IMG/VR virus record: IMGVR_UViG_3300042562_001598
Location: 62,001 to 126,000 of that record
Direction: 5' to 3' (one strand)
DNA length: 64,000 nucleotides
Below the pieces are notes generated by a model, which worked only from the letters and a program-made list of their open reading frames with translations, ran no database searches and was not told the DNA's origin. The position numbers and the translations under genes are program-made. How positions within the stretch are numbered: position 1 is the first letter of the stretch; every line of letters starts with the position of its first letter. Below are positions 24,721-64,000 of this stretch, in pieces.

Positions 24721-25317
24721 ATGGTTGAAATAATTAAATATGGTAAGTTCAAACCTAAAGGAAAACAAAAAAAGAAACGACAAATAATATTAACTCATAC
24801 CTCAAGAAATATTAATGATTATCTATTGATGTTAAAACATAGGTATAATGGGAAATATAGTAGAATACCCAATTATATTATAACTCAAGATGGTAAAGTA
24901 TTACAATTATTGGGTAATGGGGAGTACTCAACATATTTTCAAGATTTAAATGTTGATAGAAATTCGGTTATTATATGTTTAGAAAATTTGGGATGGTTAC
25001 AAAAAGAACCAATGACAGGTAATTATATTAATTGGATTGGTGATATTTATAAAGGAAATACCATTGATAAAAAATGGAGAGACTATTATTTTTGGCATCC
25101 ATATTCAGATAGTCAAATGAACTCGTTAAGTTTTTTATGTAAAAAAATATTAAAAGAAATTTCGATTAAAACACAAATTATAAGTAATAATACTAAAATA
25201 ACTAATATTGAAAAACATGAAGGGATTGTAACGAGAAGTAATTTTAATCTTAATTTTACAGATGTTAGTCCCGCATTTAATTTTGATAACTTTATAAAAC
25301 AAATAGAAAATGAATAG
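24721..25317 (+). CDS. N-acetylmuramoyl-L-alanine amidase (Amidase_2)-fold protein, possibly inactive
   Basis: IILTHTS, PNYII..DGKVLQL, NSVIICLEN, YSDSQ..SL, DVSPAF. Confidence 0.7.
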   Translation: MVEIIKYGKFKPKGKQKKKRQIILTHTSRNINDYLLMLKHRYNGKYSRIPNYIITQDGKVLQLLGNGEYSTYFQDLNVDRNSVIICLENLGWLQKEPMTGNYINWIGDIYKGNTIDKKWRDYYFWHPYSDSQMNSLSFLCKKILKEISIKTQIISNNTKITNIEKHEGIVTRSNFNLNFTDVSPAFNFDNFIKQIENE

Positions 25318-25885
25318 TTCACACGATGAAATTAAAAAATTACTAAAAGCTTCAAGAACCTTATTAAGTAATGATAAATTAAATGAAGACATTAATACTA
25401 TTAGAAAACAATATAGTCTTCTAACTGAAGATGATACTACTACTAAATTAGATTTGTCTAAATCTGTTGAAGATAAAATTGATGATGATACCGAAAGTAG
25501 TGATGATAAATCTCAAACTTATAGAATTTCAGGTGGATTATTATCATTACATGGTAAAAGTCAAACAGACTTAGAATTAACTACAGATGAAAAATTAGCG
25601 TTCCAAGAAACTATGGATGATTTTGTTGCGGAAGTTGCGGATTTAGTTGATTTCAATAAGTTAAATGTTTATCCAAATAATGTTGAATGGTCTGGTAAAA
25701 TTATTGACGCTAATATTGATTTCTTCTTTTCAATAGGTGAGGAAAATGGTGTTTATATTAATGGTGATATGATAAAAACGGATGATGAATTTTTAGAAAT
25801 GATTAATAAATTAAAAACTTTTTACGAAAAATTTAAATCAAAATGGGCTACTATATTAGCTGATAGAAAAAAAACGATTAAGTAA
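25310..25885 (+). CDS. Hypothetical putative virion protein
   Basis: N-terminal leader with LNE/LLTE motifs. Confidence 0.55.
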   Translation: MNSSHDEIKKLLKASRTLLSNDKLNEDINTIRKQYSLLTEDDTTTKLDLSKSVEDKIDDDTESSDDKSQTYRISGGLLSLHGKSQTDLELTTDEKLAFQETMDDFVAEVADLVDFNKLNVYPNNVEWSGKIIDANIDFFFSIGEENGVYINGDMIKTDDEFLEMINKLKTFYEKFKSKWATILADRKKTIK

Positions 25886-25886
25886 T

Positions 25887-26516
25887 ATGAAGAATTTTTT
25901 AAATTCTATTGACCTTAAAACTCTATTAATTATAGGGTTAATAATTTTATTAGTATTTAGTAAAGGTTGTAAAGACGATAATGATGTTAAAGGTGGTACT
26001 ACAACTATTGGAGGTAAAACATATCAAGATGTCAAACATACAGTGGATACTATTATAGTTCCAAAAATTCAAATTGAATACAGACCTGGTAAGACTATTT
26101 ATAAAGAGAGACCTATATTTGTTTCAATGCCAAGAGAAGTTGATACTGCGTTTATATTAAAAGATTATTATTCTAAAGTTGTTTATAAAGACACTTTAAA
26201 GTTAAAAGATAGTTTAGGTTACATATCAGTTATTGATACTATTAGTGAGAATAAAATAAAAGGTAGAGTTTGGAATTCACAGGTTAATCAAATAATAATT
26301 AAAGATACTAAAATAGTTAAAGAAATACCGGTTAATCAATTATATATTGGGGGTGTTGCCGGATTTGATAGAGTTAATATTGTTAATTATGTTGGTCCTA
26401 CTTTAACATTGAAAACAAAAAAAGATAAGTTATATTCTTTAGGTGTTGGATATGGAACAAATAAACAAATATCTATCCAAGGTGGGATATTTTGGAAAAT
26501 AAAACTAAAAAAATAA
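25887..26516 (+). CDS. Lipoprotein/membrane-anchored protein, spanin-like candidate
   Basis: Hydrophobic signal + SKGC; DT repeats; C-terminal amphipathic beta strands ending GIFWKIKLKK. Confidence 0.5.
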   Translation: MKNFLNSIDLKTLLIIGLIILLVFSKGCKDDNDVKGGTTTIGGKTYQDVKHTVDTIIVPKIQIEYRPGKTIYKERPIFVSMPREVDTAFILKDYYSKVVYKDTLKLKDSLGYISVIDTISENKIKGRVWNSQVNQIIIKDTKIVKEIPVNQLYIGGVAGFDRVNIVNYVGPTLTLKTKKDKLYSLGVGYGTNKQISIQGGIFWKIKLKK

Positions 26517-26761
26517 TGGCACTTACATCTACAGAAAAAAAAGAAATTGAAGTCTTGATTAGAAAAGAAATTAAAGATTTCTTGGGGTCTAACACTGTTC
26601 AACAACATGAACAAAAGATTATTGATATGTTATCTAAAGAATTGAAACGAGGTAAACTTGAAGGTGATGTTAAAGACATTGTTGTAAAAGTTTTTAGAGA
26701 ATTCTATAACTTTATGTGGACTCAAAGAGGGTATTGGGAACCAAGACTAAAAAACGCTTAA
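26516..26761 (+). CDS. Hypothetical protein
   Basis: ATG overlaps the previous stop (TAATG). Confidence 0.6.
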   Translation: MALTSTEKKEIEVLIRKEIKDFLGSNTVQQHEQKIIDMLSKELKRGKLEGDVKDIVVKVFREFYNFMWTQRGYWEPRLKNA

Positions 26762-26762
26762 A

Positions 26763-27266: not shown

Positions 27267-27290
27267 AGATATTTATAATAAAACTTAAAA

Positions 27291-28481
27291 ATGAAAAAAT
27301 TAAATACAACTTACTTAGATAATTTAATTGGAAAAATATTAAATGAGACTTTAGAAGAAAAAGCTGATAAACTGGTTTCAAAAATAAATGAACTTGGTGG
27401 TATTGGTTCAGATGATGAATTCTCTGAAGACGAATGGATTGATGTTAATAATTTGGAGGAAGGTGAAGTGGGAGATTTTCCGAAACACCAAGCTTTTGAT
27501 TATGTTGAGGAAGAAGAAGGTAATGAGGATGAAAAACCTGGTTATGTTAACCAATTAGATGATGAAACTTGCAAATATCATATGAAAAATTTTGGTCCTG
27601 ACGATGAAATGACTAAGGAATTTTGTAAATCTGAAATGACTGAAACTTTAAAAGGGAAACAAAAAGTTTTGGATAAAAACAAAAACAATAAGATTGATTC
27701 TGAAGACTTTAAGTTATTAAGAAAAGGTGTTCAAAATGAATCTGTATGTCCTAAATGTGGGATGGAAGATTGTAAATGTAATCACAAAAAAACAACTAAA
27801 GAGTCTATTAAATTAACTGAATCTGAAATGGTTAATTTAATTGAAAAAATAATATTAGAACAAAAAACTCAAGACAATATAAAAAGTATTGGAATGGCTA
27901 AAGGTTATGACAAATACAACCAAGTTCATAAAAAATCAGGTAAAGAAAATGAGGATAGTCTTAAAGATGTTGCTAAAAAAATGAAAGATTATGTTGCAGC
28001 TGGTTCTAAAGGTGAATATACTGAAAATCCTACACATTTCCCAAAAGGTAATGGTGAGTTAGCGAAAATGTCAAAAAAAACTTATACGATGTCAGACGCT
28101 GGTAAAGAATTCATTGATGACTTTATGAGACCAGGTATGGAGAATTTAGATTATGATGAAATTCACCCTAATGACGAATGGATGAAAAAAACTATTGAAG
28201 GTTCATCTGAAACAGGTAATAGTTCAGAATATGCTAACGCTGTGAAAACAGATGTTAATTCAAGGATTAATAAAAAGAGAGAAGAAAATAAATTCGCTAA
28301 AGCTAAACGAATGGCTTATAACAAATCTAAACAACCTGTTGTTATGGATAAAACTGGTGAAGAAACAGGAAAAGGTCTTAACATTAAGACTGAATCGGTT
28401 AATGATAAGACTCAAAACAAAATTAATGAAGAATTTGATAAAATGAAATCATTAATATCTTACAATAGGAAGACTCAATAA
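27291..28481 (+). CDS. Putative head-internal/core protein with EF-hand-like and Cys motifs
   Basis: TATTTAT at 27270; ILNE, LTESE...IILEQ and INEE motifs; LDKNKNNKIDSEDF; CPKCGMEDCKC. Confidence 0.55.
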   Translation: MKKLNTTYLDNLIGKILNETLEEKADKLVSKINELGGIGSDDEFSEDEWIDVNNLEEGEVGDFPKHQAFDYVEEEEGNEDEKPGYVNQLDDETCKYHMKNFGPDDEMTKEFCKSEMTETLKGKQKVLDKNKNNKIDSEDFKLLRKGVQNESVCPKCGMEDCKCNHKKTTKESIKLTESEMVNLIEKIILEQKTQDNIKSIGMAKGYDKYNQVHKKSGKENEDSLKDVAKKMKDYVAAGSKGEYTENPTHFPKGNGELAKMSKKTYTMSDAGKEFIDDFMRPGMENLDYDEIHPNDEWMKKTIEGSSETGNSSEYANAVKTDVNSRINKKREENKFAKAKRMAYNKSKQPVVMDKTGEETGKGLNIKTESVNDKTQNKINEEFDKMKSLISYNRKTQ

Positions 28482-32136: not shown

Positions 32137-33591
32137 ATGAATTTCATTAAATTATTATCTAATCTGATAGTTGAAGATTCTAAATTTGAGAATCTATATA
32201 ACAAATACGTTGAGGTTAAAGACAAAAAAAACCCAGAAGTTAAGAAAAAGGGATTACCTTTTGATATGTTTAAAAAATTAATATTTGCTGACCCAACAAC
32301 AAGAGTTCCCCAAGGTTTTGATGTTGACGGTGCTCAAGTAGCGGACATGGATTCTGTTAAAGTTGGTAAATATGTTCAATGGATTATCAATACTTTTGGT
32401 AAGTTACCAACAACTATTACTGATGTTGAACCTGGAACACCTGAATATAAAGAACAAGTTAAAGAATTGGTTAGATTATATTTGGAGGATTTGGACCACT
32501 TGAAAACTTTATTGGAGAAGTATGAAAGGTTTAAAGGTAGTTTACAAGACCCTACTAAAAAAGATATTAATAAAGTTAATTCTGTTGAAGAATTAATGAC
32601 TTTACCTATCGTTGTTTCAGACGAAGGTGATACGATAGAATTAGATTTATATCGTGGTAAAAAAGTTAAAAAAGTTAAAGGAGAAGATTCAACATCTCCA
32701 GCTCAAGATAAATTTAAATTCCCTGGTGCTGAAATATTAAGAGATAACGGTGAGTATACATTAATTAAAATTGCTGACAAAGGACAAATAGGTTCTGATG
32801 CGGCGTCTTATTTTGGTGGTTATGATGGTAAAGCACAGGCTGGTGAAACTAACTGGTGTACAGCTGCTAAAGACTCCGGTTACTCAAAAACTTATAGAAA
32901 CCAAGGTCCTTTATATATTTTCATTGCTAATGACCCTAAAGGTCAAGTTGGTGAAAAAACTGGATTACCTTCAGAAAGATACCAATTCCACTTTCCTAGT
33001 AACCAATTTAGAGATAGATTTCAAAACAGTGGAAATATTGATGTTGTTAAATTTATGAATGGTTCGTTTGCGGATTTTAAAGATTTATTAAAAACTGAAT
33101 TTTTACGAATTGGTGGAACTACTAGTGGTGGAGACGGTGGAAGACTTAGTGGTAGTAAAATAGAAATTAAATTCCCTGGGAATGTTTCATTATACGAACA
33201 AATATATGGTGTTGAAAAAGATTTACAAGGACAATTCAACGAGATAATTAATACATTGCCGGATGATATTGAATCATTGGTGATTAAAAACACTACAAGT
33301 ATGGATGTAGCTTTAGATGTTCCTGAATCTATTGGTAATTATAAAAATTTACAAACTTTAACTCTACTTAATTTGGTTAAAACATTACCTGAATCAATTG
33401 GTAATTTGACAGATTTACAATATTTGATTTTAACTGACAACCCTTCAATTGAGAAGATACCTGCAAGTGTTGCTAAATTACAGGATTTAGTTTTTATTAA
33501 CTTACAAAGAAGTAACCGTGGTGTAGAAATACCAGCTGAGGTTAAGGAGTTATTAGAGGATTCTTCAGATGGTTTTTACGCTATGAAGTAA
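32137..33591 (+). CDS. Leucine-rich-repeat protein with uncharacterised WCT-motif domain (late copy)
   Basis: VPESIGNYKNLQTL / LPESIGNLTDLQYL / IPASVAKLQDL LRRs; TATTTAT at 32113; leader MNFIKLLSNLIVE. Confidence 0.8.
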   Translation: MNFIKLLSNLIVEDSKFENLYNKYVEVKDKKNPEVKKKGLPFDMFKKLIFADPTTRVPQGFDVDGAQVADMDSVKVGKYVQWIINTFGKLPTTITDVEPGTPEYKEQVKELVRLYLEDLDHLKTLLEKYERFKGSLQDPTKKDINKVNSVEELMTLPIVVSDEGDTIELDLYRGKKVKKVKGEDSTSPAQDKFKFPGAEILRDNGEYTLIKIADKGQIGSDAASYFGGYDGKAQAGETNWCTAAKDSGYSKTYRNQGPLYIFIANDPKGQVGEKTGLPSERYQFHFPSNQFRDRFQNSGNIDVVKFMNGSFADFKDLLKTEFLRIGGTTSGGDGGRLSGSKIEIKFPGNVSLYEQIYGVEKDLQGQFNEIINTLPDDIESLVIKNTTSMDVALDVPESIGNYKNLQTLTLLNLVKTLPESIGNLTDLQYLILTDNPSIEKIPASVAKLQDLVFINLQRSNRGVEIPAEVKELLEDSSDGFYAMK

Positions 33592-35036: not shown

Positions 35037-35323
35037 AAAATGTAGAAGTAGAGTTATACCTCAATCAGTTTATTAAGTTTTTTGATAATAACCCTAACGA
35101 CCTAATGAATTTAATTGGGGATTTAGGTAAAGAAGAATTTTATCTTAAAGTTAAGGAACAATCATATTTGAATGTTGAGAATGGTGAGGAACCATCATTA
35201 ACCCAAAAACAACTTATTGCGATTGTTGTTAAGATGAAAAAACGAGATATTAATGATGATGAGGTTAAATTATTTGAGAAAATATTCAAGGATACAAAAT
35301 TTGGTCCATTATGTTTGAATTAG
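35033..35323 (+). CDS. Hypothetical protein
   Basis: 96-aa ORF ending CLN. Confidence 0.6.
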   Translation: MKNVEVELYLNQFIKFFDNNPNDLMNLIGDLGKEEFYLKVKEQSYLNVENGEEPSLTQKQLIAIVVKMKKRDINDDEVKLFEKIFKDTKFGPLCLN

Positions 35324-39127: not shown

Positions 39128-39241
39128 AGTACTAAAGTGTTAGAAGTTTATTGATAATGATAAATATCAATCAAAATAGATTAATGTCAAGATTACAAAT
39201 AATATATTGATATATTTATAAAAATATGATACATTTGCCTT

Positions 39242-40582
39242 ATGAAAAAAATTAAATTAACCGAACAAGGTTTACATAAATTAATCAGAACTATTGTTGA
39301 ACAAGTTGAGGAAACATACCTTAAAGTTCCGGCTGAACAATATCGTGATTTATTAGAAAAAGCGAGTAATGACCCAAGTCTTTTAGCCAGAATAAAAACT
39401 TTAAAGGGGAAGTCACTTATTATTGTTGGAGATTTGAAATTAAAAGGTTTACCGATTGATAATTTAGGAAACATTAAAGTTGTTCAAGGTTCATTAGATA
39501 TTAGTGATACAAATATCAGAGACCTTAAAGGTGTTGAGGTAACAGGTTATGTTACGGATTGGAATACACCATTCGCTAAAATAAGAGAAAGAGCTCAGGA
39601 GAGAAAGAAATATGAAGAAGCTGAAAGTAATAGAGAGGATGATGTTTGGAATCGTACTAATGAGAATATTGATGATGTAGGGTTAAAGGCTAACGCTTTA
39701 TTTGAACATTTAGTTAGTATTGGTGTTATTGATGAGTTAACTGAAGATGATATTGCGGAAATAGAAACTTTACAAAACAGAAGTAATTCATTACAAGAGA
39801 GATTTGCAGAAACAGAAGACTCGGAAGAGACTAATAGATTACGTGATGAAATTTCTGATATTGATGAAAGAATTGATGAAATTAGAGGTGAAAAACAAGA
39901 TATCTATAATATTATAAACACTAGTTACCAAGCCTATGGTCTTACTCATTTTGAGGTTTTAGGATTAGGTCGTGAGTATTCAGTTGGAACTGAATATGAA
40001 ATGGATGCTGCGGCATATGAGTATATGGAGAGCATGATTGACGACATTGGTGTTGAAGGTTATAGAGATGATGTTCTTGAAGATTTTTTAGATATTGATG
40101 ACTTACTTGATTCTGAAAGAGAACATTATGAGTATGATGTTAGTGATAGTCCGGAATCTTATTTTAATGCTGATGATTATGAATTAACTCCAGAACAAGA
40201 AGAAAGAAAAGAACAACTTGAGTCTGAAATTGAGACCTATGAAGAACGATTATCTGAATACGAAGAAGGGTCTGACGAATACGACCAAATTCAAGAACAT
40301 TTAGAGACTTTACAAGAAGAATTAGATAGTATTGAGGTTGATATGGAACCAACCCAAGAAATGATTGATAGAGTTGTAGAAGATAGATTAGATGATATTA
40401 AGAGAGACCCAGCTGGTCACATAAAAGATATGGGATATGACCTTAAAGATTATGTTGACAAAGACGCATTAATTAAATATGTGATTCAACAAGATGGATA
40501 CGGTTTAATGTCAGGGTATGATGGAGATGTTGATGAAGTAAGAATTGGTAGTGAACTATATTATGTAATAAGAGAAAATTAA
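39242..40582 (+). CDS. Very acidic protein with N-terminal leader and short LRR/L-domain-like repeats
   Basis: MKKIKLTEQGL...IVEQ leader; VGDLKL...VQGSLDI...VTG repeats; D/E-rich coiled coils. Confidence 0.65.
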   Translation: MKKIKLTEQGLHKLIRTIVEQVEETYLKVPAEQYRDLLEKASNDPSLLARIKTLKGKSLIIVGDLKLKGLPIDNLGNIKVVQGSLDISDTNIRDLKGVEVTGYVTDWNTPFAKIRERAQERKKYEEAESNREDDVWNRTNENIDDVGLKANALFEHLVSIGVIDELTEDDIAEIETLQNRSNSLQERFAETEDSEETNRLRDEISDIDERIDEIRGEKQDIYNIINTSYQAYGLTHFEVLGLGREYSVGTEYEMDAAAYEYMESMIDDIGVEGYRDDVLEDFLDIDDLLDSEREHYEYDVSDSPESYFNADDYELTPEQEERKEQLESEIETYEERLSEYEEGSDEYDQIQEHLETLQEELDSIEVDMEPTQEMIDRVVEDRLDDIKRDPAGHIKDMGYDLKDYVDKDALIKYVIQQDGYGLMSGYDGDVDEVRIGSELYYVIREN

Positions 40583-41991: not shown

Positions 41992-42396
41992 ATGAAAAAC
42001 AGATTTATAATTTCGGAAGAAGAAAAGAAAAGTATACTTGGACTACACGAAACATTCAAGAACACTGAAATATTAAAAGAACAGGAAGAAGTTCTTAACC
42101 AAAATTTTATTATGGCCGTACAAGATTTCTTAAACCAAACTCAAGGAACTAAATTAGTTGTTGATGGGTTAAGTGGACCTGGTTCTAAAACTGAAGAAGC
42201 TGTTATGGAATATCAATCTAAAATAGGTGCAGTCCCTACAGATGGTAAAATAGGTTCTGAAACTATTGCTAAAATGAAAGTTAAAGACCCTCGTAATTTT
42301 GAGAAATTTGAGGAAATGATTGCTAAACATGGTGACTTTATGGAAAAATTAAGTCATTTAGCAAATCAAGGATTAAATAAACTAAAGTTTGAATAA
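41992..42396 (+). CDS. Peptidoglycan-binding domain protein with N-terminal leader
   Basis: VQDFLN...LVVDGLSGP..TEEAVMEYQ...DGKIGSET; leader MKNRFIISEEEK; TATTTAT at 41970. Confidence 0.75.
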   Translation: MKNRFIISEEEKKSILGLHETFKNTEILKEQEEVLNQNFIMAVQDFLNQTQGTKLVVDGLSGPGSKTEEAVMEYQSKIGAVPTDGKIGSETIAKMKVKDPRNFEKFEEMIAKHGDFMEKLSHLANQGLNKLKFE

Positions 42397-43499
42397 TGAA
42401 TAGATTAGTACTAACTGAAAAAGAATTCAGAGATAAAACAAGACAAATATTCAAGGAAGAACAATATAAGATTGCTGAAGAAAAATTTAATAATTTAACT
42501 AAAGTTGATAAAATATTTGTTGTTGAATTCTTAAAAGAAATTTACCCTGATAAAAGTGTTTTATTGAATGAAGATAAATGGTATAACACATTAGGTGATA
42601 TTGCTGGTATATTTGACCCCACCGGTATTATTGATGTTGTTAATGGTATTAGTTATTGGAGACAGGGTGATAAGTTATTTGCTTTATTATCTTGGATATC
42701 CGCGATTCCGTTCTTGGGTGACGCTATAGCTAAACCTGTTATTAGTGTTATGAAAGTAGGTGGTGATAGTGCTAAAGTATTTAAGAGTGCTGTTATTGCT
42801 GGTGATGCCGCAAAAATGGCTAAAACCGCTAAAGAAATGGGTGGACCTGTTGCTAAACTTGTTGAGACCTCACCTATGTGGGCTAGCAAATTGATTGCTG
42901 CTTTACGAGGTTCTATAGGTAAAGTTCCATTTTTGGGAACTAGATTTGTTGGATTAGTTGAGGAATTTTTACAAATATTTGTTAAAGGTTCTAAAGGACT
43001 TGAAGGTTCTGCAAAATTAGTAGGTAAATTAGAAACTAAAGGTTTATCTCAAGTTGAGAAACAAGCTTTATTAAATCAGATAGCTAAAGAAAGTAAATTT
43101 AGAGGGTTTAGAGACTATAAAAATATAAACCCTACATTATTCTCCAGGGTAGCCGGTGGTGTTCCTAGATTGTGGGGAAATAGAGCTACAAGGTCATTAA
43201 TGAGAAGAACTAAATGGTATTTGGGTTTATTGGATTCTGTTGGTGTTGGTAATTTTGTTGGTCCTGAAGAATTGGAAAAACAGATTCCTAATTTGGAACA
43301 AAAAGTTGCTAAATATAGTAAGACACAAAAATCACAAGATTTATGGAATGAAGAATTTGGTGATGTTAAAGATGGTGAGACACCAATAAAACCTGTGACC
43401 TCTGTCGCACCTGAAAAACCAACTGGTGATACTAATACTGACCCAATTGGTAGTTTTATTAGTTCTTTAATGGGTGGTGCGATAAAATCAATGATATAA
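42396..43499 (+). CDS. Protein with pre-toxin (PT-TG-like) hydrophobic segment and N-terminal leader
   Basis: DIAGIFDPTGIIDVVNGISYWRQGDKLFALLSWISAIPFLGD. Confidence 0.5.
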   Translation: MNRLVLTEKEFRDKTRQIFKEEQYKIAEEKFNNLTKVDKIFVVEFLKEIYPDKSVLLNEDKWYNTLGDIAGIFDPTGIIDVVNGISYWRQGDKLFALLSWISAIPFLGDAIAKPVISVMKVGGDSAKVFKSAVIAGDAAKMAKTAKEMGGPVAKLVETSPMWASKLIAALRGSIGKVPFLGTRFVGLVEEFLQIFVKGSKGLEGSAKLVGKLETKGLSQVEKQALLNQIAKESKFRGFRDYKNINPTLFSRVAGGVPRLWGNRATRSLMRRTKWYLGLLDSVGVGNFVGPEELEKQIPNLEQKVAKYSKTQKSQDLWNEEFGDVKDGETPIKPVTSVAPEKPTGDTNTDPIGSFISSLMGGAIKSMI

Positions 43500-43510: not shown

Positions 43511-44941
43511 ATGAAGATTAAAAAAAATACACAAGTTATTATTGAAAGTGGGTTAAGAAATATTCGTTCTCTTGCTGATAGATACAAAAAAGCTAAAATA
43601 TATTTTCATCAAGATTTAGATGGTGTGGTTAGTGCAATTGCTATGAAGGAATACCTGAATAATAATGGTATTAAAGTAGTTGATTGTGAAGTTATTCAAT
43701 ATGGTGATAAAGAATTTGCGGTTAAGAAAGCTGATGCTAAAGGTGAAGTTATGCCTGTTTTAGTCGATTTTGCCCACGGCAAGCCAATGTTCATAATTCA
43801 CACCGACCACCACGATAGACAAGCTGGAGCTGAAGATACAGGTTCAACCTCTTTTAGACAAGCTCGTTCTAATGTTGAAACAATATCACAAATTGTATCA
43901 CCAAAAGAATTATTTACAAATGCTGACATCTTATTAATTTCAACGGTTGACTCCGCAAATTATGCGATGAATGATATTAGTGTTGATGAGGTTATTAACT
44001 ATATTTTTAAGTTAGATAAAGGCAAATCAATTGAGAAGAATAAAATGTTGATGGGTCTAGTAACAAATAAATTATTGTTAGCCTTTAAAAACAAACCAAG
44101 ATTTTTGGAAAGATTAGTGATGGACTCAACCCCATCTTTATTAAATATTTTACAGAATATCAAAAAAATTATGGTTGAGAAGGGCTATGCTAAAGTAGAA
44201 CAACTACAAAAGAACAAGGAAACTTATATTAAACAAATGGCTAATAGTCCTGCTGTGAAAGTTATGGGGAATATCATAGTTCAATGGGGTGGAGGAAATA
44301 TGTTTTCACCAGGTTCTTACGATAGATACACACCATTTAAAAATAATCCTGAAGCTGATTTTTTAGTGATTGGTTGGGGTGATATAGGGTTGGTTCAAGC
44401 ATCTTGTAATCCATATAAGAAAGATAGGGCTTTAAAAGGGATTGATTTAGGAAAAATTAAAGATATTGTTCTTTCAAAATGGGAAAGTAGATTGAAGTTA
44501 AAAGATATTTCATTATCAACACTTAAATGGATGTCTGAAAATAGTAAAGATTTTAATGAAGAATCAATAGGATTTACATTTAAAGATTTTGTTGCGATTT
44601 ATGGTGAAGATTTCAAAAAAATAGATAATGGTCGTGACTTATTAACTAAAATTGGTTATAGCATGATTAAACCTTATATATCAATGAGTGAAGAAGAAAA
44701 ACAATTGATGGAAAATATAAATATTACAGCTTGGGATGTTATTGATAAAGTCAGTGGTGGTCATAAATGTATTACTAATATTTCAGGATTGAATTATTTA
44801 GGTAAAGATTTACAAAGACCTGGTGATGAAGACATTATGTATGTTAAAGATATTGATAAACAAGCGACTATTAAATTCACAAAAATGATTCAGGATGAGT
44901 TTGTAAGAGTGTTACAAGAGAAAATTGAATCAGAGAAATAA
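43511..44941 (+). CDS. DHH-family phosphoesterase
   Basis: HQDLDG, VDF, HTDHH and SGGHK motifs. Confidence 0.75.
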   Translation: MKIKKNTQVIIESGLRNIRSLADRYKKAKIYFHQDLDGVVSAIAMKEYLNNNGIKVVDCEVIQYGDKEFAVKKADAKGEVMPVLVDFAHGKPMFIIHTDHHDRQAGAEDTGSTSFRQARSNVETISQIVSPKELFTNADILLISTVDSANYAMNDISVDEVINYIFKLDKGKSIEKNKMLMGLVTNKLLLAFKNKPRFLERLVMDSTPSLLNILQNIKKIMVEKGYAKVEQLQKNKETYIKQMANSPAVKVMGNIIVQWGGGNMFSPGSYDRYTPFKNNPEADFLVIGWGDIGLVQASCNPYKKDRALKGIDLGKIKDIVLSKWESRLKLKDISLSTLKWMSENSKDFNEESIGFTFKDFVAIYGEDFKKIDNGRDLLTKIGYSMIKPYISMSEEEKQLMENINITAWDVIDKVSGGHKCITNISGLNYLGKDLQRPGDEDIMYVKDIDKQATIKFTKMIQDEFVRVLQEKIESEK

Positions 44942-46193: not shown

Positions 46194-46280
46194 AATTGAC
46201 TAATGGGGAAAATTATCTTATTATTTTTTACAATAAACTTTTGTTATGGTTTTAATATATTTATTGTTAAAGACATAACT

Positions 46281-46709
46281 ATGGGTAAGAAATTTATAAT
46301 TACGGAAGAAGAAAAGAACGAAATAAAAACATTATATAACATTAATGAACAAGGTAATACTTTTGTTAAAAGATACAATAAGTTTATTACTTATGTTGAT
46401 GATATGAAAAGTGTTGAAAATGGGGGAGACTTCATTGTTAAGTTTAGTAATGGACTTGTGTTTATAACTAATATGGGTAATTCAAAAATGGTTCAGTTCG
46501 CTCAAGATGGAGGTGTTACTAAAGGAACTATGGAGGGTAAAGAATATCAAATGATTGAGTGTAAACAATCGGATGGAAAAGATGTTGTATTTTTATTGTT
46601 CAACGATGGGAAACTAAGGGTATCATTAACATCTTTAATAATAAAACAAATGGAACTAACTGATATTCCTAATAATCCTGAAGAGAATTACATTGAATTC
46701 TACAAATAA
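46281..46709 (+). CDS. Hypothetical protein with N-terminal leader
   Basis: MGKKFIITEEEKNEIKTLYNINEQ; TATTTAT at 46258. Confidence 0.6.
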   Translation: MGKKFIITEEEKNEIKTLYNINEQGNTFVKRYNKFITYVDDMKSVENGGDFIVKFSNGLVFITNMGNSKMVQFAQDGGVTKGTMEGKEYQMIECKQSDGKDVVFLLFNDGKLRVSLTSLIIKQMELTDIPNNPEENYIEFYK

Positions 46710-46819
46710 TAGTTTGCTTATTTATATAAAATAAGATGGTGGAGTGGTTAACTTATGTTGACCCCAAAAAAAAGGAGGTAACTATTACCTCTTTTTTCTT
46801 TTTTATTATATTTATAAAT

Positions 46820-47167
46820 ATGAAAGTCATTATTACAGAGAATAGAATATATAATATTGCTAAAAAAGAGTTAACCAAGAAGTTTGGTGATTTAATTCTG
46901 TTTAAGGATGAAAAATTCCCAAATAGGGTTTTCTATATTGACGAACAACAAAAAGTTTATTTTGATAATAATAAAATTGATGATAATGTCAGAATTAATT
47001 ATCATATTTTTGGACCATTTTTAGAAGACACCTTTCAATTTGAGTATGAACAAATACTACAAGTTACAAAGGAATGGTTAGAGGAACATTACAATTTAGA
47101 AATAAATAAATTATACGCGGTTAATCCTATTACTGAGATTCGTTGGAGAAATATTACGAATAGATAA
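46820..47167 (+). CDS. Hypothetical protein with MKVIITE leader (family with 53005, 9955)
   Basis: TATTTATAAATA at 46809-20; clear similarity to 53005..53397. Confidence 0.65.
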   Translation: MKVIITENRIYNIAKKELTKKFGDLILFKDEKFPNRVFYIDEQQKVYFDNNKIDDNVRINYHIFGPFLEDTFQFEYEQILQVTKEWLEEHYNLEINKLYAVNPITEIRWRNITNR

Positions 47168-47184: not shown

Positions 47185-47502
47185 ATGGGAAATATAATTA
47201 TCACAGAAAAACAATTAAACTTATTGGTTGATAAGTTTAAGAACAATATAAATGAAGAACACGAAGGTGGTTCTTACATGGCTAAAGAACAACTATACAC
47301 TATAGCGACTTTAGCTATGAAGATGTGGGAAAAAATGGAAGATGGTGACCAATTAGAGGATTGGCAAGAAACTAAAATCGCACAATCAGAACAATCAATA
47401 ATATCTGTTGTTAAACATTTTATGTATGGTGAAACTGAAACCAAAGATACTAATAGTGGTATGGATAGATTAGATTTTGGTGATATTATAATAGGTCAAT
47501 AA
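47185..47502 (+). CDS. Putative head-associated protein with leader
   Basis: MGNIIITEKQL...INEE; YMAKEQL...LEDWQETKIAQ. Confidence 0.55.
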   Translation: MGNIIITEKQLNLLVDKFKNNINEEHEGGSYMAKEQLYTIATLAMKMWEKMEDGDQLEDWQETKIAQSEQSIISVVKHFMYGETETKDTNSGMDRLDFGDIIIGQ

Positions 47503-47521: not shown

Positions 47522-48130
47522 ATGAGTGATATCACAAAACAATTCAAGGATAATTTAGCTAAAGAAGTTAACAAGACGGTTATTAACGAAAAAATGTCAA
47601 AAGAGACTGGTTCTGATAATACATTAACAAATGTTAACAACATTGCAGTTTATCTATTGGATGATAAAACAATAAAAATCATTACTGAAAGAATTAAAGA
47701 TGAGTATGCCGCTCATTATTATTACAGAGCTGCAGCTAATTGGTGTAGAGATATGAATTATAAAAAAGCTGCTGAATTCTTCTCTAATGAAGCTGACGAT
47801 GAGTTAACTCACGCAAAAACATTACAGGAGTATATGGTTGATTTTAATATTATACCTGAAATACCTCAAGCTAAAATTAAACACGAATTTAATAATTTAA
47901 TAGATGTTGTTTATGGTGCTTATAAAATGGAGTTGGGTCTTATGAATTCTTATAATAAAAACTCGCAAGAGTTATTTAATAGTGATATCACTACTTACGA
48001 TTTATTTACTAAATTCAGAAAAATACAAAAAAATGCGGTTGTTGAATATAATGATTTGATTAACGCAAGTAACTTAATTGATAAGAAAGATAAATTTCAA
48101 GTTCTTTATTTTGAACAGACTTATTTTTAA
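47522..48130 (+). CDS. Ferritin-like protein
   Basis: DEYAAHYYY, AAEFF..EADDELTHA, E, Q ferroxidase-pattern residues; N-terminal extension ending VINE. Confidence 0.8.
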   Translation: MSDITKQFKDNLAKEVNKTVINEKMSKETGSDNTLTNVNNIAVYLLDDKTIKIITERIKDEYAAHYYYRAAANWCRDMNYKKAAEFFSNEADDELTHAKTLQEYMVDFNIIPEIPQAKIKHEFNNLIDVVYGAYKMELGLMNSYNKNSQELFNSDITTYDLFTKFRKIQKNAVVEYNDLINASNLIDKKDKFQVLYFEQTYF

Positions 48131-49297: not shown

Positions 49298-50908
49298 ATG
49301 AATTTAATAAAATCAATAAAAGCTTTAATAACTGAAGCGTCAAAGAAGAAAATCCTAATGGATAAACTTGGGTTTAATGAAAACCAAGCGGAAATGTTAG
49401 ATAGTTTATGTGGACCCTTAGCTGTATGGATGGGTAATAAATTACTTAAGTTTTTTTCTGATTATCATGGGGGTATGACTCAAGAATTAAACCCTGAAGA
49501 ATTAAAAAAGACATCAATTAATTTGGTTAATCAAAACAATTTAGTTCGCAGACAACGAGAACAAATAGTATCCATTATGGATTATATTAGAGTTGGGTTA
49601 GACGGAAATGTTTCAACGATTAAAGATTTATTTTATGATGAGTTATATAACGAATCAAATCAGTGGCATCAATCTTTGGGAACCAAAGATGGTGATATTA
49701 ATTATAAAGAAGAACATCCTATTGTTGTTGATTTTAGAAATGAAGATGGTCTTGGGTTTTATTGGGTTGATACAGAAACTAATGATTGTTCGGAAGAATC
49801 CCGGAGAATGGGACATTGTGGTAGAACAGATAGAAGTAATAGCGTTTATTCTTTGAGAGAATTTAAGAAACTTAAAGATAAATATACGATTAACAAAAGT
49901 CACTTGACTGCGGCGATTGGTGATAGAGATGGTATATTATACCAATTAAAGGGTCCTCACAACTCAAAACCGAAAGAAGAATACCATAACTACATATTAC
50001 CATTGTTTTATGTTTTGGGGGGTGATGGTGGAGAAGCTGGATACTTAATTCAAGGGTTTGGTTCAGAATATCAAAGTCAAGAAGATTTCAAGCTTACTGA
50101 TTTACCTGAAGAGGTGCTAAAATCATTATATAGTAATAGACCTGAATTGTTTAACACAAGAAGTTTAAAGAACAAATTAGCAGAATTAGGTCTTATAGAA
50201 AAACCTGAGTACGATTATAATGTAACCATTGATATTGACCCAGGTCGTCTTTCATATTATATTGATGGTGATTATAAAGTGGGAAGTTATAAAAAGAAAA
50301 CACCTGCTGGTAATGATTATAGTGTTGATGTTTTTTTATTTGATAAAATAATGGGTGGTGATACCTGGGAATTTTGTGGTTCAGATTCTGATGATTGGTC
50401 TGGTGCTCTACAATATTATGTGAATAGTGAAAACGAAAAGCGAATTGAGGAAATGGTTAAGGAAATGGCTTCAAGTAATAATCCAGATTTTGATGAGGAT
50501 GAATTTAACGAATTAAGTCTTGATGAAAAAATTGAGGAATATGATGAAGATTACGATATTAGAAACGCTTTAAACAGGGCTTATGATGATGCTTGTTGTA
50601 GTGAATATACTGATTATTTGTATGATACATTAAGAGGTGCGGTTGAGGAGTATGGTAAGATTATTAGATTTGATGATGAACGAGTTATTTTTGAGGTTAA
50701 TATAGAAAGTTATATAAATGAACTTGATGATGAGATTTTTGACGAACATCTTGAAAACTGTAATGATGATTTAGCATGTGTTTTTGAGGAGATGATTGGT
50801 CAAGGTGATGTTGATAAACCTGAATATAGTACTGACGACCGGTGGTCTCCGGATATTGATTATGGAAACTATAATGAAATATTGAGTGACCGACTATCGG
50901 ATATATAA
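49298..50908 (+). CDS. PcfJ-like domain protein with leader and acidic C-terminus
   Basis: EESRRMGHCG, VYSLRE, SHLTAAI, YQLKGPHNSKP; leader MNLIKSIKALITEA; TATTTAT at 49275. Confidence 0.65.
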   Translation: MNLIKSIKALITEASKKKILMDKLGFNENQAEMLDSLCGPLAVWMGNKLLKFFSDYHGGMTQELNPEELKKTSINLVNQNNLVRRQREQIVSIMDYIRVGLDGNVSTIKDLFYDELYNESNQWHQSLGTKDGDINYKEEHPIVVDFRNEDGLGFYWVDTETNDCSEESRRMGHCGRTDRSNSVYSLREFKKLKDKYTINKSHLTAAIGDRDGILYQLKGPHNSKPKEEYHNYILPLFYVLGGDGGEAGYLIQGFGSEYQSQEDFKLTDLPEEVLKSLYSNRPELFNTRSLKNKLAELGLIEKPEYDYNVTIDIDPGRLSYYIDGDYKVGSYKKKTPAGNDYSVDVFLFDKIMGGDTWEFCGSDSDDWSGALQYYVNSENEKRIEEMVKEMASSNNPDFDEDEFNELSLDEKIEEYDEDYDIRNALNRAYDDACCSEYTDYLYDTLRGAVEEYGKIIRFDDERVIFEVNIESYINELDDEIFDEHLENCNDDLACVFEEMIGQGDVDKPEYSTDDRWSPDIDYGNYNEILSDRLSDI

Positions 50909-53004: not shown

Positions 53005-53397
53005 ATGAAAGTGATTATCACTGAAAGACAAAGAAAACTATTATCCGAAGACGAGGATAGAGATTTTTTAGTTAAGAAAAAAATTGCAAAAAAAGAATTA
53101 ACAAAACGCTTTGGTGATTTGATACCTTATGAGACCAAAGATATTCCTGATTACTTTTTTTATATTGATGAAAATAAAAATATTTATTTTGAGTGTAATA
53201 AAAAAAATGGTGAAGTCTGGGTAGATAATAAAACAATTAGGTCATTTTTAAAAGAAATTTTTTCATTTAATTACAAACAAATTCAACAGGTTATAAAAGA
53301 ATGGTTGGGAGAACATTACAAATTAGATGTGACAAAAACCATCAGGTCTCCCAATACTGTGCATCAATATGTTGCGAGAACATTACAAAATAAATAA
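53005..53397 (+). CDS. Hypothetical protein with MKVIITERQ leader (family with 46820, 9955)
   Basis: IAKKELTK(R/K)FGDLI...FYIDE...KEWL.EHY.L shared with 46820. Confidence 0.65.
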   Translation: MKVIITERQRKLLSEDEDRDFLVKKKIAKKELTKRFGDLIPYETKDIPDYFFYIDENKNIYFECNKKNGEVWVDNKTIRSFLKEIFSFNYKQIQQVIKEWLGEHYKLDVTKTIRSPNTVHQYVARTLQNK

Positions 53398-61072: not shown

Positions 61073-61396
61073 ATGAAAAAGATATTAATAATGTTAATGA
61101 TGTTAGGGATAGCATCTTGCAAATCAACAAGTGGTGTTAGTGATTATGGATATGAAATGAAAGACAACACACTTTACCTTAAAGGGGTTGAAATTGGGTA
61201 TCTTGAAGCAGTTAAGTTACAAGATAAAGGTGGGGAAATAAGAAGAGAGGTTGTGTTTGTTATATATAATGAAACAGAACCAGTTGGTAGAGCTCGTGAA
61301 ATCATAACTTACTTAAAATCTCGTATTTCAAAATCAGATATTGAATTAAAAACACTTTATAAAAAAAATAATATAAATAAAATTAAATTAAACTAG
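61073..61396 (+). CDS. Putative lipoprotein
   Basis: MKKILIMLMMLGIASC lipobox. Confidence 0.65.
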   Translation: MKKILIMLMMLGIASCKSTSGVSDYGYEMKDNTLYLKGVEIGYLEAVKLQDKGGEIRREVVFVIYNETEPVGRAREIITYLKSRISKSDIELKTLYKKNNINKIKLN

Positions 61397-61398
61397 AT

Positions 61399-61785: not shown

Positions 61786-61808
61786 TCTTTAATGATGTTA
61801 AACTAAAG

Positions 61809-61840
61809 AAAAAGTCTCTATCAATATAGAGACTTTTTTT
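61809..61840 (+). terminator. Intrinsic terminator
   Basis: AAAAGTCTCTAT-caat-ATAGAGACTTTT. Confidence 0.8.
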
Positions 61841-61856
61841 ATATAAAACAATTATT

Positions 61857-62033
61857 ATGAAATTAGGAAAATATATTGGTCAAGAACTATTAGAAGACAT
61901 GGTTATAATTAATACTGTTGTTTACACAGAACTAGACAATACAGAATATGGTGGGTTAATTGATTCTACCTGGATTATATTCACTCACATTATGGAATTA
62001 ATTAATGATGAGGTAACCAACAAATTCCGTTAA
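61857..62033 (+). CDS. Hypothetical 58-aa protein (not in ORF track)
   Basis: MKLGKYIGQELLEDM...; terminator-like hairpin at 62035-63. Confidence 0.45.
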   Translation: MKLGKYIGQELLEDMVIINTVVYTELDNTEYGGLIDSTWIIFTHIMELINDEVTNKFR

Positions 62034-62147
62034 TAAAAAACCCCCAATATGATTGAGGGTTTTAAGGTTTACATATAATTAATTATAATTGTTTAATAAT
62101 ACAAAATCAAATATATTTGTGGTATATTTATTAATATATTTATTTTT

Positions 62148-62618
62148 ATGGAATTAAGTAAAGAAGAAGAAAGAGGTATTGATTTGGTCGTTAGAGCGGT
62201 ATCAAAGAAATATCCATTTATAAAGGGTTGGGTGTTAAATCAGGTTGTTAAAGCTGATAATACTGAACATACAATTATATTCATTGATATTCTTATTAAT
62301 ATGGGGGCTTATCTAAAGTATTTTGATTTATACCCTAGTAAGTTTTATATCAATTATAGTAATAAGAGTGAATTCCAATCATCGTCACTATGGCATTGGG
62401 GTAGTGAAGAAGAGGGTGGTAAATGGGTTGGGTCATATGATGAATCGCGTGAAAAATATGAGGAAAAATCAAATAATTTGAATCAACATATTCGTGAGAT
62501 GTTAAAAGATAGGTATAGTGAAATACCGGAAGAATATCAAAAATTGTATATAGGTTATGGTGGAGAACTTACACCATCATCACTATTAAACTTCCAATAC
62601 AGAATTGCAAATGATTGA
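62148..62618 (+). CDS. Hypothetical protein, tandem paralogue 1
   Basis: ELSKEEERGIDLVVRAVSKKYPFIKGW. Confidence 0.65.
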   Translation: MELSKEEERGIDLVVRAVSKKYPFIKGWVLNQVVKADNTEHTIIFIDILINMGAYLKYFDLYPSKFYINYSNKSEFQSSSLWHWGSEEEGGKWVGSYDESREKYEEKSNNLNQHIREMLKDRYSEIPEEYQKLYIGYGGELTPSSLLNFQYRIAND

Positions 62619-63078
62619 GTTAACAAATAATGAGAAAAAAGGGATTAACTTGAGTGTTAAAGGTCTTGCTAAAACATATCCTTTTGTTAAGGGGTGGGAT
62701 TATAATGAAAATTCTGATGATTATAGATACTCACTTTATATTAATCTATTAATTGACCCTATTGAATCAATTAATTTTATTCGTGAAAAATATGGGATTG
62801 AGTTTTATCCTTCAAGAACATTAATTGATATGATTACTAACAGACCTGACGAATACGAAACACCTGTTTTAATGTTGTATGCTTCGGTTGAAGGTGAAGG
62901 TGGTGAAATGATGGGTAGTAGTAATGAGGCTTGGTCTGATACATTTAATAAATTATATGATATAAAATTGGAGATGGTTGAAAGGTTAAATGACAAATAT
63001 AATATGTTACCTGATGAATATAAAGTTCCTAAAGCATTATCACTTCAGAGATATAGAATAACTCCAGAAAAAAAATAA
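62611..63078 (+). CDS. Hypothetical protein, tandem paralogue 2
   Basis: ELTNNEKKGINLSVKGLAKTYPFVKGW. Confidence 0.65.
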   Translation: MIELTNNEKKGINLSVKGLAKTYPFVKGWDYNENSDDYRYSLYINLLIDPIESINFIREKYGIEFYPSRTLIDMITNRPDEYETPVLMLYASVEGEGGEMMGSSNEAWSDTFNKLYDIKLEMVERLNDKYNMLPDEYKVPKALSLQRYRITPEKK

Positions 63079-63080
63079 TT

Positions 63081-63854
63081 ATGAATTTACAGGAAAATAT
63101 AGTAAGGATTAGAGAGATGATGCTTGCTGAGGAGATGGTGCAATCTGATGCTTGGAAAATGATTAAGAAATCAATAGATATTCTTAAGAAGAAAGATAAG
63201 GTTTTATTATTGAGTTGTTCCAATAGATACAATTGGAATGAAGAAAACATAGACATTCCAAAGTCAAAGATGATTGCAATGTATATCCAAGATGAGTTGG
63301 GTGATAAGGCGGTCTTAATTGATGTTCCAGAACTTAATATATTACCTTGTGAGGGCAATGTTTCAAGAAAGGATGGTAATAGTTGTGGTTTATTAAAAGC
63401 GTTGCTTAAAGATAAGGATAAGAACCCCTCCGGTAATCATAGATGTTGGGCAAGTTATAACAATCCTAAAGATGAGTTATGGAAAGTATCCAAGGAATTG
63501 TTTGAGTCTGACACTGTAATATTTTTTAGTTCTATAAGATGGGGACAGACTAATATGTATTACCAAAATTTAATTGAGAGGTTAACTTGGATTGAGAATA
63601 GACACGCAACACTTGGTGAATCAAATATAGTTAAGGATATTGAGAGTGGGTTTATTTGTACAGGTCAAAACTGGAATGGTGAGAATGTTACTGGAACTCA
63701 ATTAAAGGTACACGAATTTTATGGGTTTAAACCGAATGATGATTTATATTGGAATTGGCAATACACTAAAGATGTTAATGATGAGACGAAAAAATCTTAT
63801 AAGGAATCACATAAAAAATTCATAAAAGACACGAAGATACCTGAAAATAAATAA
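63081..63854 (+). CDS. Flavodoxin-fold / NADPH-dependent FMN reductase-like protein with leader
   Basis: VLLLSCSNR, LNILPCEG, D.VIFFSSIRWG, LIERL; leader MNLQENIVRIREMMLAEE. Confidence 0.7.
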   Translation: MNLQENIVRIREMMLAEEMVQSDAWKMIKKSIDILKKKDKVLLLSCSNRYNWNEENIDIPKSKMIAMYIQDELGDKAVLIDVPELNILPCEGNVSRKDGNSCGLLKALLKDKDKNPSGNHRCWASYNNPKDELWKVSKELFESDTVIFFSSIRWGQTNMYYQNLIERLTWIENRHATLGESNIVKDIESGFICTGQNWNGENVTGTQLKVHEFYGFKPNDDLYWNWQYTKDVNDETKKSYKESHKKFIKDTKIPENK

Positions 63855-63872
63855 AAAATTTGTTTTATAATT

Positions 63873-64000
63873 ATGAAATTACAGGAAAATATAGACAGAA
63901 TGAAATCAATGATGGGTTTAATTGGTGAGGGTACGGATAAACTTACCAATAAATTAATTGATAATTTTAGTAAAGAGTTTAATTACACTAGATTAGCTAA
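63873..64000 (+). CDS. Partial CDS (3'-truncated) with MKLQENIDRMKSMMGLIGE leader
   Basis: Open to the window end; same leader type as 63081. Confidence 0.6.
   Translation, partial: MKLQENIDRMKSMMGLIGEGTDKLTNKLIDNFSKEFNYTRLA

What the first reader, a model, noticed from the sequence alone, without database searches (positions are those of the whole stretch)
25310..64000. Shared N-terminal leader on unrelated late proteins: putative capsid-targeting/protease-cleavage code
Seen: many unrelated proteins begin with a short leader ending in (I/L)xE: MKKIKLTEQ...IVEQ (39242), MKNRFIISEEEK...ILKEQ (41992), MNRLVLTEKE (42396), MKIKKNTQVIIES (43511), MGKKFIITEEEK...INEQ (46281), MKVIITEN (46820), MGNIIITEKQ...INEE (47185), ...VINEK (ferritin 47522), MNLIKSIKALITEA (49298), MKVIITERQRKLLSED (53005), MNFIKLLSNLIVED (32137), MNLQENIVRIREMMLAEE (63081), MKLQENIDRMKSMMGLIGE (63873), ...KILNE (27291). 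Most lie downstream of TATTTAT. Established: T4 internal proteins carry a short capsid-targeting sequence removed by the prohead protease gp21 after Glu in (I/L)xE. Inference: a modular tag loading a varied payload (DHH phosphoesterase, ferritin, flavoprotein, LRR, PcfJ-like, PG-binding) into the head for injection at infection.
Basis: partly seen in the sequence, partly recalled or inferred. Interest (0 to 1): 0.75.

Follow-up and report, generated by a model that had tools for sequence, protein, structure and literature searches.

The report
Portable cleavable leaders on phage proteins
About forty otherwise unrelated late proteins of this 282-kb freshwater T4-type jumbo phage start with one of a few conserved 13-30-residue leaders ending in (Ile/Leu)-x-Glu, the cut site of T4-type head proteases, so they are probably cargo loaded into the capsid and injected with the DNA; no experiment has tested this.

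Summary
The generic (I/L)xE triplet is only 1.6x enriched. Behind it lie five discrete leader families: A (MKIIITENQ..), A2 (..ITEEEKxRILxLH..LxEQ), C (MKKVIRLTESDLxRIVRRVIKE), D (MNLQENIxRIKxMMGxIxE) and F.

HMMs trained only on other viral contigs find 38 leader proteins in this genome, eight of them in the window. All hits sit at an N-terminus. Leaders sit on unrelated bodies: 176 body families in about 1 Mb of related contigs. A class C profile finds 9,508 protein clusters worldwide.

Orthologous bodies swap leader class exactly at the terminal Glu, and conservation collapses after it. The genome encodes a T4 gp21-type S77 prohead protease, an acidic scaffold and a gp23-like capsid protein. 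Their own conserved sites (LINE|A, LTE|Q, LIE|Y) match the leader ends.

Leader genes share the A-TATTTAT-WA motif with head and tail genes. Best reading (0.6): an expanded, multi-class version of T4's capsid-targeting sequence. Packaging, cleavage and injection are inferred, not shown. Main rivals are an uncleaved docking helix and a tag for the phage's own ClpC/ClpP. No cultured relative or virion proteome exists.

The parts
39242..40582 (+). Class C leader protein (446 aa). Leader is residues 1-20, ending IVE|Q. The body is related to the five-member paralogue family at genome 160894-166707.
   Evidence: orthologues carry class C or a short ..LxEQ leader joined at the same point
41992..42396 (+). 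Class A2 leader (residues 1-30, ending ILKE|Q) followed by a PG_binding_1 domain from residue 39.
42396..43499 (+). Leader-like start MNRLVLTEKE.., below HMM threshold. Second gene of the 41992 run.
43511..44941 (+). DHH phosphoesterase with a degenerate leader ending VIIE|S. Orthologues carry a canonical class A leader or other leaders, all joined at ..(I/L)xES|G(I/L)R.
46281..46709 (+). Class A2 leader protein; leader ends NINE|Q. The true start is probably 46281, not 46203.
46820..47167 (+). Class A leader protein (MKVIITEN..), member of a four-paralogue family. The true start is probably 46820, not 46736.
47185..47502 (+). Class A leader protein; leader ends NINE|E. Orthologues keep the leader.
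47522..48130 (+). Ferritin-like protein with a 23-residue N-terminal extension ending VINE|K. The domain starts at residue 52. Orthologues have a helix ending GL(L/M)EQ followed by an acidic linker.
   Evidence: not recognised by the leader HMMs
53005..53397 (+). Class A leader protein (MKVIITERQRKLLSE|D), same body family as 46820.
63081..63854 (+). Class D leader (ends MLAE|E) on an FMN-reductase-like flavoprotein body.
63873..64000 (+). Class D leader (ends LIGE|G). The gene continues to genome 126553, beyond the window.
27291..28481 (+). Protein with an N-terminal helix ending ILNE|T and a complete class C module inside it (about residues 170-193, ending ILE|Q).
32137..33591 (+). LRR protein with a short 13-residue leader-like start ending IVE|D. 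Weak: this form is seen on only 3 body families.
49298..50908 (+). 536-aa protein with a short 13-residue leader-like start ending ITE|A (weak). Its body has only a PcfJ-like lead.
39213..39219 (+). TATTTAT late-promoter-like motif, consensus A-TATTTAT-W-A. Further copies lie at 27270, 32113, 41970, 46258, 46809 and 49275, each 11-29 nt before a leader ATG.
   Evidence: the same motif precedes the protease, scaffold, portal-position and large tail genes

Best explanation
The leaders are cleavable capsid-targeting propeptides, an expanded multi-class counterpart of the T4 capsid-targeting sequence.

Proposed mechanism:
1. Leader genes are transcribed together with head genes from the A-TATTTAT-WA motif.
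2. Each precursor carries an N-terminal strand-plus-amphipathic-helix (classes A, A2, C) or helix (D, F) of 13-30 residues. This binds the scaffolding core while the prohead assembles, so the cargo is enclosed.
3. The gp21-type S77 protease then cuts after the Glu of the terminal (I/L/V)-x-E, as it does in the capsid protein and scaffold. This frees the cargo from the core.
4. The cargo stays in the DNA-filled head and leaves with the DNA at the next infection, acting in the periplasm or cytoplasm. Cargo bodies include peptidoglycan-binding and L,D-transpeptidase-like proteins, a DHH phosphoesterase, LRR proteins, a ferritin-like protein, a flavoprotein and many proteins of unknown function.

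Shown here: the motifs and their N-terminal specificity, modularity, leader swapping at the Glu, the presence of the T4-type head machinery with matching sites, and the shared promoter motif.

Inferred: binding to the core, cleavage, packaging and ejection.
For: 1. N-terminal specificity: 32 observed against 0.21 expected. HMMs trained on other contigs hit 38 genome proteins, always at an N-terminus.

2. Modularity: 48 hand-picked leader proteins fall into 38 body families in this genome. In about 1 Mb of related contigs there are 402 proteins in 176 families. The class C profile finds 9,508 clusters at E<=0.001, and 138 of the top 150 start within 10 residues of the N-terminus.

3. Selection acts on the peptide: synonymous codons vary at every degenerate site.

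4. A cleavage-like junction. [IL]xE occurs at residues 9-32 in 74% of leader proteins (81% of family representatives) against 33% of other proteins, and is not enriched further in. Information content falls from about 2 bits to below 0.7 right after the Glu. One body carries class C or class F leaders joined exactly at ..hxKE|N. The DHH, 39242 and ferritin orthologues swap leaders at the same Glu. The AF2 helix ends at E22 and the body begins at residue 28.

5. The machinery is present. There is a Peptidase_S77 protease (4e-25) that aligns to T4 gp21 structure 5JBL with the His and Ser motifs. There is a gp23-like capsid protein whose propeptide aligns to T4's.

6. In nine related genomes the capsid protein keeps LINE|A, the scaffold keeps L(T/N/K)E|Q before its acidic region, and the protease keeps L(I/V)E|Y near its N-terminus. 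T4 gp21 has a comparable LIE-9 site (PMC9026906).

7. All eight leader-bearing contigs that are at least 86% complete have the S77 protease.

8. The late motif precedes 54% of leader genes, 16% of other genes and 3.9% of random windows, and it also precedes the protease and scaffold genes.

9. The system is virus-specific: 596 Gb of cellular genomes give only 1-2 viral-type hits, both on tiny MAG contigs.

10. Several bodies bind or modify peptidoglycan yet have no signal peptide. That fits delivery by ejection.
Against: - There is no direct evidence. No cultured relative exists, there is no virion proteome, and only DNA runs hold the sequence.
- The leaders do not resemble the T4 sequence MKTYQEFIAE and are two to three times longer.
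- (I/L)xE is a short, common motif.
- Forty or more cargo species, about 10% of genes, is many.
- Class C modules also occur inside proteins. In 33 of the top 150 hits there is a second copy, mostly without a preceding Met. So strict N-terminality is not required, and a plain interaction helix would explain that as well.
- Co-occurrence with the S77 protease may simply reflect one clade.
- The phage also encodes ClpP and a ClpC-like ATPase.
Confidence: 0.6

Rival explanations
1. The module is an uncleaved docking or oligomerisation helix. It brings many late proteins to some common partner other than the prohead core, such as another virion part, a membrane or pole complex, or a phage-made compartment. 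The terminal Glu is just the helix end.
For: The module can be internal and repeated. AF2 models it as a plain helix. (I/L)xE is common at the ends of amphipathic helices. Nothing shows cleavage.
Against: The end of conservation and the leader-swap joints fall exactly on the Glu. The same ..INE..LTEQ and ..LxEQ endings occur at the predicted sites of the capsid protein and scaffold. Tail and baseplate-size proteins lack the leaders.
Confidence: 0.17
2. The leaders are recognition tags for the phage's own AAA+ protease, so that tagged proteins are unfolded or degraded on schedule. That protease consists of ClpP at genome 167273-168007 and a ClpC/ClpA-like ATPase at 216102-218153.
For: ClpP (2e-52) lies directly after the 12-gene leader array at genome 160894-167231. 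The ClpC-like gene and a UVR-motif gene lie next to the head module. From memory, one ClpX N-terminal signal class is Met-basic-three hydrophobics, which class A resembles.
Against: A complete, leader-rich relative (G007, holding locus L071) has the S77 protease but no ClpP, although host ClpP could substitute. No McsB-type kinase is present. Tagging about 40 late, co-structural proteins for destruction has no obvious logic. Degrons do not need a conserved Glu-terminated junction.
Confidence: 0.07
3. The shared 5' ends are by-products of gene shuffling or of expression needs. Promoter plus leader would form a recombination cassette like the PeSL cassettes of T4-type phages (PMC2839356), or an A/T-rich start would boost translation. 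The peptide itself would have no function.
For: Leader genes lie in tandem arrays in variable regions. Many carry promoter motif and leader together. Leaders swap between orthologues.
Against: Synonymous sites vary while the peptide is kept. Five unrelated leader classes of up to 30 residues are each conserved across genomes whose core proteins are only 57-86% identical. Internal copies are conserved without any start codon.
Confidence: 0.05

Closest known systems
T4 capsid-targeting sequence on internal proteins IPI, IPII, IPIII (and Alt), removed by prohead protease gp21
   Same: A short N-terminal tag sits on otherwise unrelated proteins and ends in (L/I)-x-E. The head machinery is homologous here: S77 protease, acidic scaffold and gp23-type capsid protein. 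T-even internal proteins are likewise a diverse set sharing only the tag (PMC3012670, PMC9026906).
   Different: There is no sequence similarity to MKTYQEFIAE. Leaders are 13-30 residues rather than 10. There are at least five leader classes instead of one, and about 40 tagged proteins per genome instead of a handful. The module can recur internally. P1' is mostly Q, E, D, S or N. No experiment exists.
Propeptides of head and inner-body proteins of phiKZ, 201phi2-1 and SPN3US, cut by diverged gp21 homologues
   Same: A jumbo phage in which many head proteins (19 processed in 201phi2-1) are cut after Glu by a T4-related protease, and proteins are ejected (PMC9026906, PMC10052503).
   Different: Their motif is S/A-x-E with a small P3 residue, whereas here P3 is I, L, V or M. 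From memory, their propeptides are not a shared portable sequence.
Phage P1 DarB N-terminal capsid-targeting signal
   Same: The N-terminal 30 residues suffice to load a large anti-restriction protein or a reporter into the capsid (PMC9024508).
   Different: It is a single cargo chain in a different head-assembly system, with no shared motif family.
Encapsulin cargo-loading peptides and MuF-domain polymorphic toxins (from memory)
   Same: A short tag or N-terminal domain directs varied cargo into an HK97-fold shell. Ferritin-like and flavin proteins are typical encapsulin cargo.
   Different: Encapsulin tags are usually C-terminal and uncleaved. MuF is a whole domain. No homology was tested here.

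Membership tests
T4-type capsid-targeting propeptide cargo | Short tag at the N-terminus shared by proteins with unrelated bodies | tested here: met
T4-type capsid-targeting propeptide cargo | Tag ends in the gp21 motif (L/I)-x-E | tested here: met
   74-81% against 33% background, with the conservation drop and leader-swap joints at the Glu
T4-type capsid-targeting propeptide cargo | Same genome has a gp21-type protease, a scaffolding core and a gp23-type shell | tested here: met
T4-type capsid-targeting propeptide cargo | Sequence likeness to the T4 tag MKTYQEFIAE | tested here: not met
   Classes A, A2, C, D and F differ in sequence and length. Only the rare 13-residue form is of similar size.
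T4-type capsid-targeting propeptide cargo | Tag is sufficient to load a foreign protein into the head | not testable with these tools
   Needs a leader-reporter packaging assay.
T4-type capsid-targeting propeptide cargo | Tag is absent from the mature virion protein | not testable with these tools
   Needs virion mass spectrometry. No cultured relative exists.
Peptidase_S77 prohead protease (gene at genome 229163-229897, outside the window) | Pfam score over the curated cut-off, with His and Ser motifs aligned to T4 gp21 | tested here: met
   85.6 bits against a cut-off of 27. ELNHP and SSRG align to 5JBL.
phiKZ-type S/A-x-E propeptides | Small residue at P3 | tested here: not met
   P3 is L 66, I 63, V 18 and M 9 among 156 junctions found in the 176 family representatives. 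The count admitted only I, L, V or M at P3, so small residues were not scored.
Sec, Tat or lipoprotein signal peptide | Uninterrupted hydrophobic core, or a lipobox Cys | tested here: not met
   Leaders are charged throughout and have no Cys (sequences).
Clp N-terminal degron | Dependence on a Clp unfoldase and protease | tested here: inconclusive
   Phage ClpP and ClpC-like genes are present, but one leader-rich complete relative lacks ClpP. Host Clp was not excluded.
Ribbon-helix-helix fold | Strand, helix A, turn and a conserved helix B | tested here: not met
   Conservation stops after the first helix. No Pfam match covers any leader.

The most novel reading that the evidence does not exclude
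Uncultured jumbo phages use a multi-class peptide address code for capsid cargo, and the code is readable from sequence alone. Class C alone marks about 9,500 protein clusters. The classes would sort cargo by place, copy number or release order. Internal copies would mark polyproteins that the head protease resolves. The capsid would carry dozens of injected effectors, including ferritin-like and flavoprotein cargo like that of encapsulins. The huge phage LR756502 uses a different, T4-like tag (MKHLKxFExF) on the same DHH body. This suggests that each lineage has its own code.
Probability: 0.25. Interest if true: 0.9.

Novelty: new variant of a known kind. Interest (0 to 1): 0.75.

Why it matters
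If the leaders are capsid addresses, a simple sequence tag would list the injected proteome of a large, uncultured group of freshwater and marine jumbo phages. That would be thousands of candidate host-takeover and anti-defence proteins that are now annotated only as hypothetical. It would show that the T4 cargo-loading principle has been scaled up from a few proteins to about a tenth of the gene set. It would also supply new portable tags for loading foreign proteins into phage heads. Full-text searches for the literal strings MKIIITE, IITENQ and LTESDL found no paper in the library that contains them.

Tried and rejected
- Complex prediction of the protease with residues 1-40 of a class C protein gave no answer (score 0.00). 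This is evidence neither for nor against.
- Nucleotide and protein searches of GenBank phages found no cultured relative carrying the leaders. The only hits to the DHH body were uncultured huge phages.
- The Bacteroidota-type early motif TAnnTTTG does not separate leader genes from other genes (3 of 48 against 36 of 358, with a 6% random background).
- The bare (I/L)xE count is too weak to use.
- The 13-residue 'class E' form of 32137 and 49298 could not be established as recurrent.
- A look-up of one two-copy protein gave only a 1.9-kb contig with no context.
- Only DNA runs hold the sequence, so no transcript starts could be mapped, and read laying was not used.
- Chance, signal peptide and ribbon-helix-helix readings were considered and rejected (see the membership tests).
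Full report
WHAT THE WINDOW IS. The window is bases 62001-126000 of a single 282,192-bp IMG/VR virus record with 30% G+C and a CheckV completeness estimate of 96%. The virus belongs to the T4 superfamily. It has a gp23-like major capsid protein, a large terminase, an S77 head-maturation protease and a strongly acidic scaffold-like protein, arranged in T4-like order at genome 224-233.5 kb. The nearest cultured relative by capsid protein is Flavobacterium phage immuto, at only 40% identity. The sequence recurs in lake-water metagenomes from 2016 to 2025. A Bacteroidota host is likely but not shown.

THE OBSERVATION. The bare (I/L)xE triplet is common, at 12.7 per 1000 residues, and is only 1.6x enriched near N-termini. 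What is real is a set of discrete leaders:
- Class A: MK(I/V)IITE(N/R/E)(Q/K/R).
- Class A2: a hydrophobic run, then (T/S)EEEKxxILxLH and, after a variable gap, (L/I)xEQ.
- Class C: MKK(V/I)I(R/K)LTESDLxRIVRRVI(K/N)E.
- Class D: MNL(Q/N/H)ENIxRI(K/R)xMMGxIxE.
- Class F: MNRSYSKIRHIQE..LEKRxLxEQ.

The core word of classes A, A2 and C begins at residues 3-5 in 32 of 406 ORFs, where 0.21 are expected (P 4e-58). HMMs built only from leaders on other contigs find 38 proteins in this genome. Every significant hit lies at an N-terminus, or at an internal Met that is the better start. Eight of the hits are in the window. Codon choice varies at every degenerate position, so the peptide is what is conserved.

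MODULARITY.
- After removal of the first 32 residues, the 48 hand-curated leader proteins of this genome fall into 38 BLAST families.
Of the 132 matches, 124 open ORFs of at least 50 residues, on many different bodies.
- The same scan of 596 Gb of cellular genomes gave 34 matches. Most are not ORFs, seven belong to a cellular enzyme family, and only one or two are of the viral type, on tiny MAG contigs.
- Within the fetched loci, 402 leader proteins represent 176 body families.
- A 32-position profile of class C finds 9,508 cluster representatives at E<=0.001 among 1.84 billion. Of the top 150, 138 have the motif starting within the first ten residues.

THE JUNCTION.
- Information content per position is about 2-4 bits through the leader. 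It falls below 0.7 bits immediately after a Glu that is preceded, two residues earlier, by Ile or Leu.
- [IL]xE occurs between residues 9 and 32 in 74% of leader proteins (81% of family representatives) against 33% of other proteins. Further into the leader proteins it is not enriched.
- Homologues of one small body carry either a class C or a class F leader, joined at exactly ..(I/L)KE|N.
- Orthologues of the window's DHH protein, of 39242 and of the ferritin-like protein also exchange leaders while keeping the Glu-terminated joint.
- An AlphaFold model made with 26 homologues puts a helix at residues 9-22, ending at that Glu. A short linker follows, then a confident beta body from residue 28.

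THE MACHINERY.
- The protease scores 85.6 bits on Peptidase_S77. It aligns to the T4 gp21 structure with the His and Ser motifs in place.
- The capsid protein's N-terminal region aligns with the T4 gp23 propeptide. The only (I/L)xE in the interval that corresponds to the T4 cut is LINE|A at residue 60.
- Across nine related genomes that site is invariant while the following residues vary. The scaffold keeps L(T/N/K)E|Q at the start of its acidic region. The protease keeps L(I/V)E|Y near its N-terminus. T4 gp21 has an LIE site at the equivalent place (PMC9026906).
- The leader endings (..INE, ..LTEQ, ..LxEQ) are of the same kind.
- All eight leader-bearing contigs that are at least 86% complete encode the protease. 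Each of the five genomes scanned for it carries 1-11 class A starts, against none for a reversed-pattern control.

TIMING. The motif A-TATTTAT-W-A lies 11-45 nt before the protease, scaffold, portal-position and large tail genes. It precedes 26 of 48 leader genes against 55 of 358 other genes (P 1.4e-8). Its rate in random 70-nt windows is 3.9%. Leader genes without it mostly follow another leader gene in the same run. That the motif is a late promoter is an inference.

CARGO. Recognisable bodies are:
- PG_binding_1 (41992 and one more).
- A Tlde1/YkuD-like L,D-transpeptidase domain, and LysM in relatives.
- DHH phosphoesterase, LRR proteins and DUF5872.
- A ferritin-like protein and an FMN-reductase-like flavoprotein.

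Where a Pfam domain is found, it begins after the leader. Peptidoglycan-directed bodies that lack signal peptides fit delivery through the tail at infection.

INTERPRETATION. The best reading is a greatly expanded, multi-class equivalent of the T4 capsid-targeting sequence. In T4, ten N-terminal residues load diverse internal proteins onto the scaffolding core and are removed by gp21 at (L/I)-x-E (PMC9026906, PMC3012670). I give this reading 0.6. Binding to the core, cleavage, packaging and ejection are all inferred.

COMPLICATIONS.
- Class C modules also occur inside proteins. This is true of 27291 in the window and of 33 of the top 150 database hits, mostly without a preceding Met. Such proteins could be fusions of neighbouring leader genes that the protease resolves, or the module may simply be an interaction helix.
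- The phage also encodes ClpP, placed directly after a run of twelve leader genes, and a ClpC-like ATPase beside the head module. A degron reading is therefore possible. Against it, one complete, leader-rich relative lacks ClpP, and the Glu-terminated joint is unexplained by it.
- A complex prediction of protease with leader gave no answer.

NOVELTY. The principle is known from T4 and from P1 DarB (PMC9024508). Glu-directed processing of many head proteins is known from phiKZ-like phages. New here are the leader sequences themselves, their plurality, the number of tagged proteins per genome and worldwide, and the internal copies. Full-text searches for three of the leader strings found nothing.

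Noticed in passing
genome 133772-137195 (+), 148197-150557 (-), 155639-159671 (-); loci L006 and L007, outside the window: At least 42 tandem tiny ORFs of 52-95 aa with overlapping starts and stops. Each begins MKTK(I/V)xLGKSV, continues with tetrapeptide repeats (x-S-V-x)n and ends ..NSI(N/K)N(R/S)(L/I). No Pfam match.
   Followed up: partly
L133 (LR756502.1, 642-kb uncultured huge phage), 41.6-kb piece: 14 of 64 ORFs begin MK(H/Y)(L/I)Kx(Y/F)(E/K)xF, a different shared leader that resembles the T4 tag MKTYQEFIAE. The DHH orthologue there starts MLRKYGQFINEE. The record has only a weak S77-like match (22.7 bits, below the cut-off).
   Followed up: partly
genome 167273-168007 (-), 216102-218153 (-), 218354-218821 (+): The phage encodes ClpP, a ClpC/ClpA-like double AAA+ ATPase and a UVR-motif protein. 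No McsB-type kinase was found. ClpP is present in 4 of 5 complete relatives.
   Followed up: partly
window 46203-46709 and 46736-47167: The longest-ORF starts are probably wrong. A TATTTAT motif lies inside the extension, and the conserved leader begins at the internal Met (46281 and 46820). The same applies to genome 152677, whose likely true start is 152719.
   Followed up: yes
window 1-64000, upstream regions: Some non-leader genes are preceded by TAnnTTTG, the Bacteroidota -7 promoter type. Enrichment over background is weak (10% against 6%).
   Followed up: partly
genome 220004-222736 and 35075-35740: Genes beside the head module, and one elsewhere, carry leader-like starts that the HMMs missed. 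Examples are an internal-Met start MKTTTLTSLTESQVNNLYNRLVE|G at 221771, and MKKIDEKILEEIARY..ITE|Q followed by a Pro/Ala-rich linker at 35075.
   Followed up: no
whole window: Near-identical sequence is held by lake-water metagenome runs from 2016 to 2025, so this is a persistent freshwater phage population. One marine metatranscriptome shares 6% of the sampled words.
   Followed up: no
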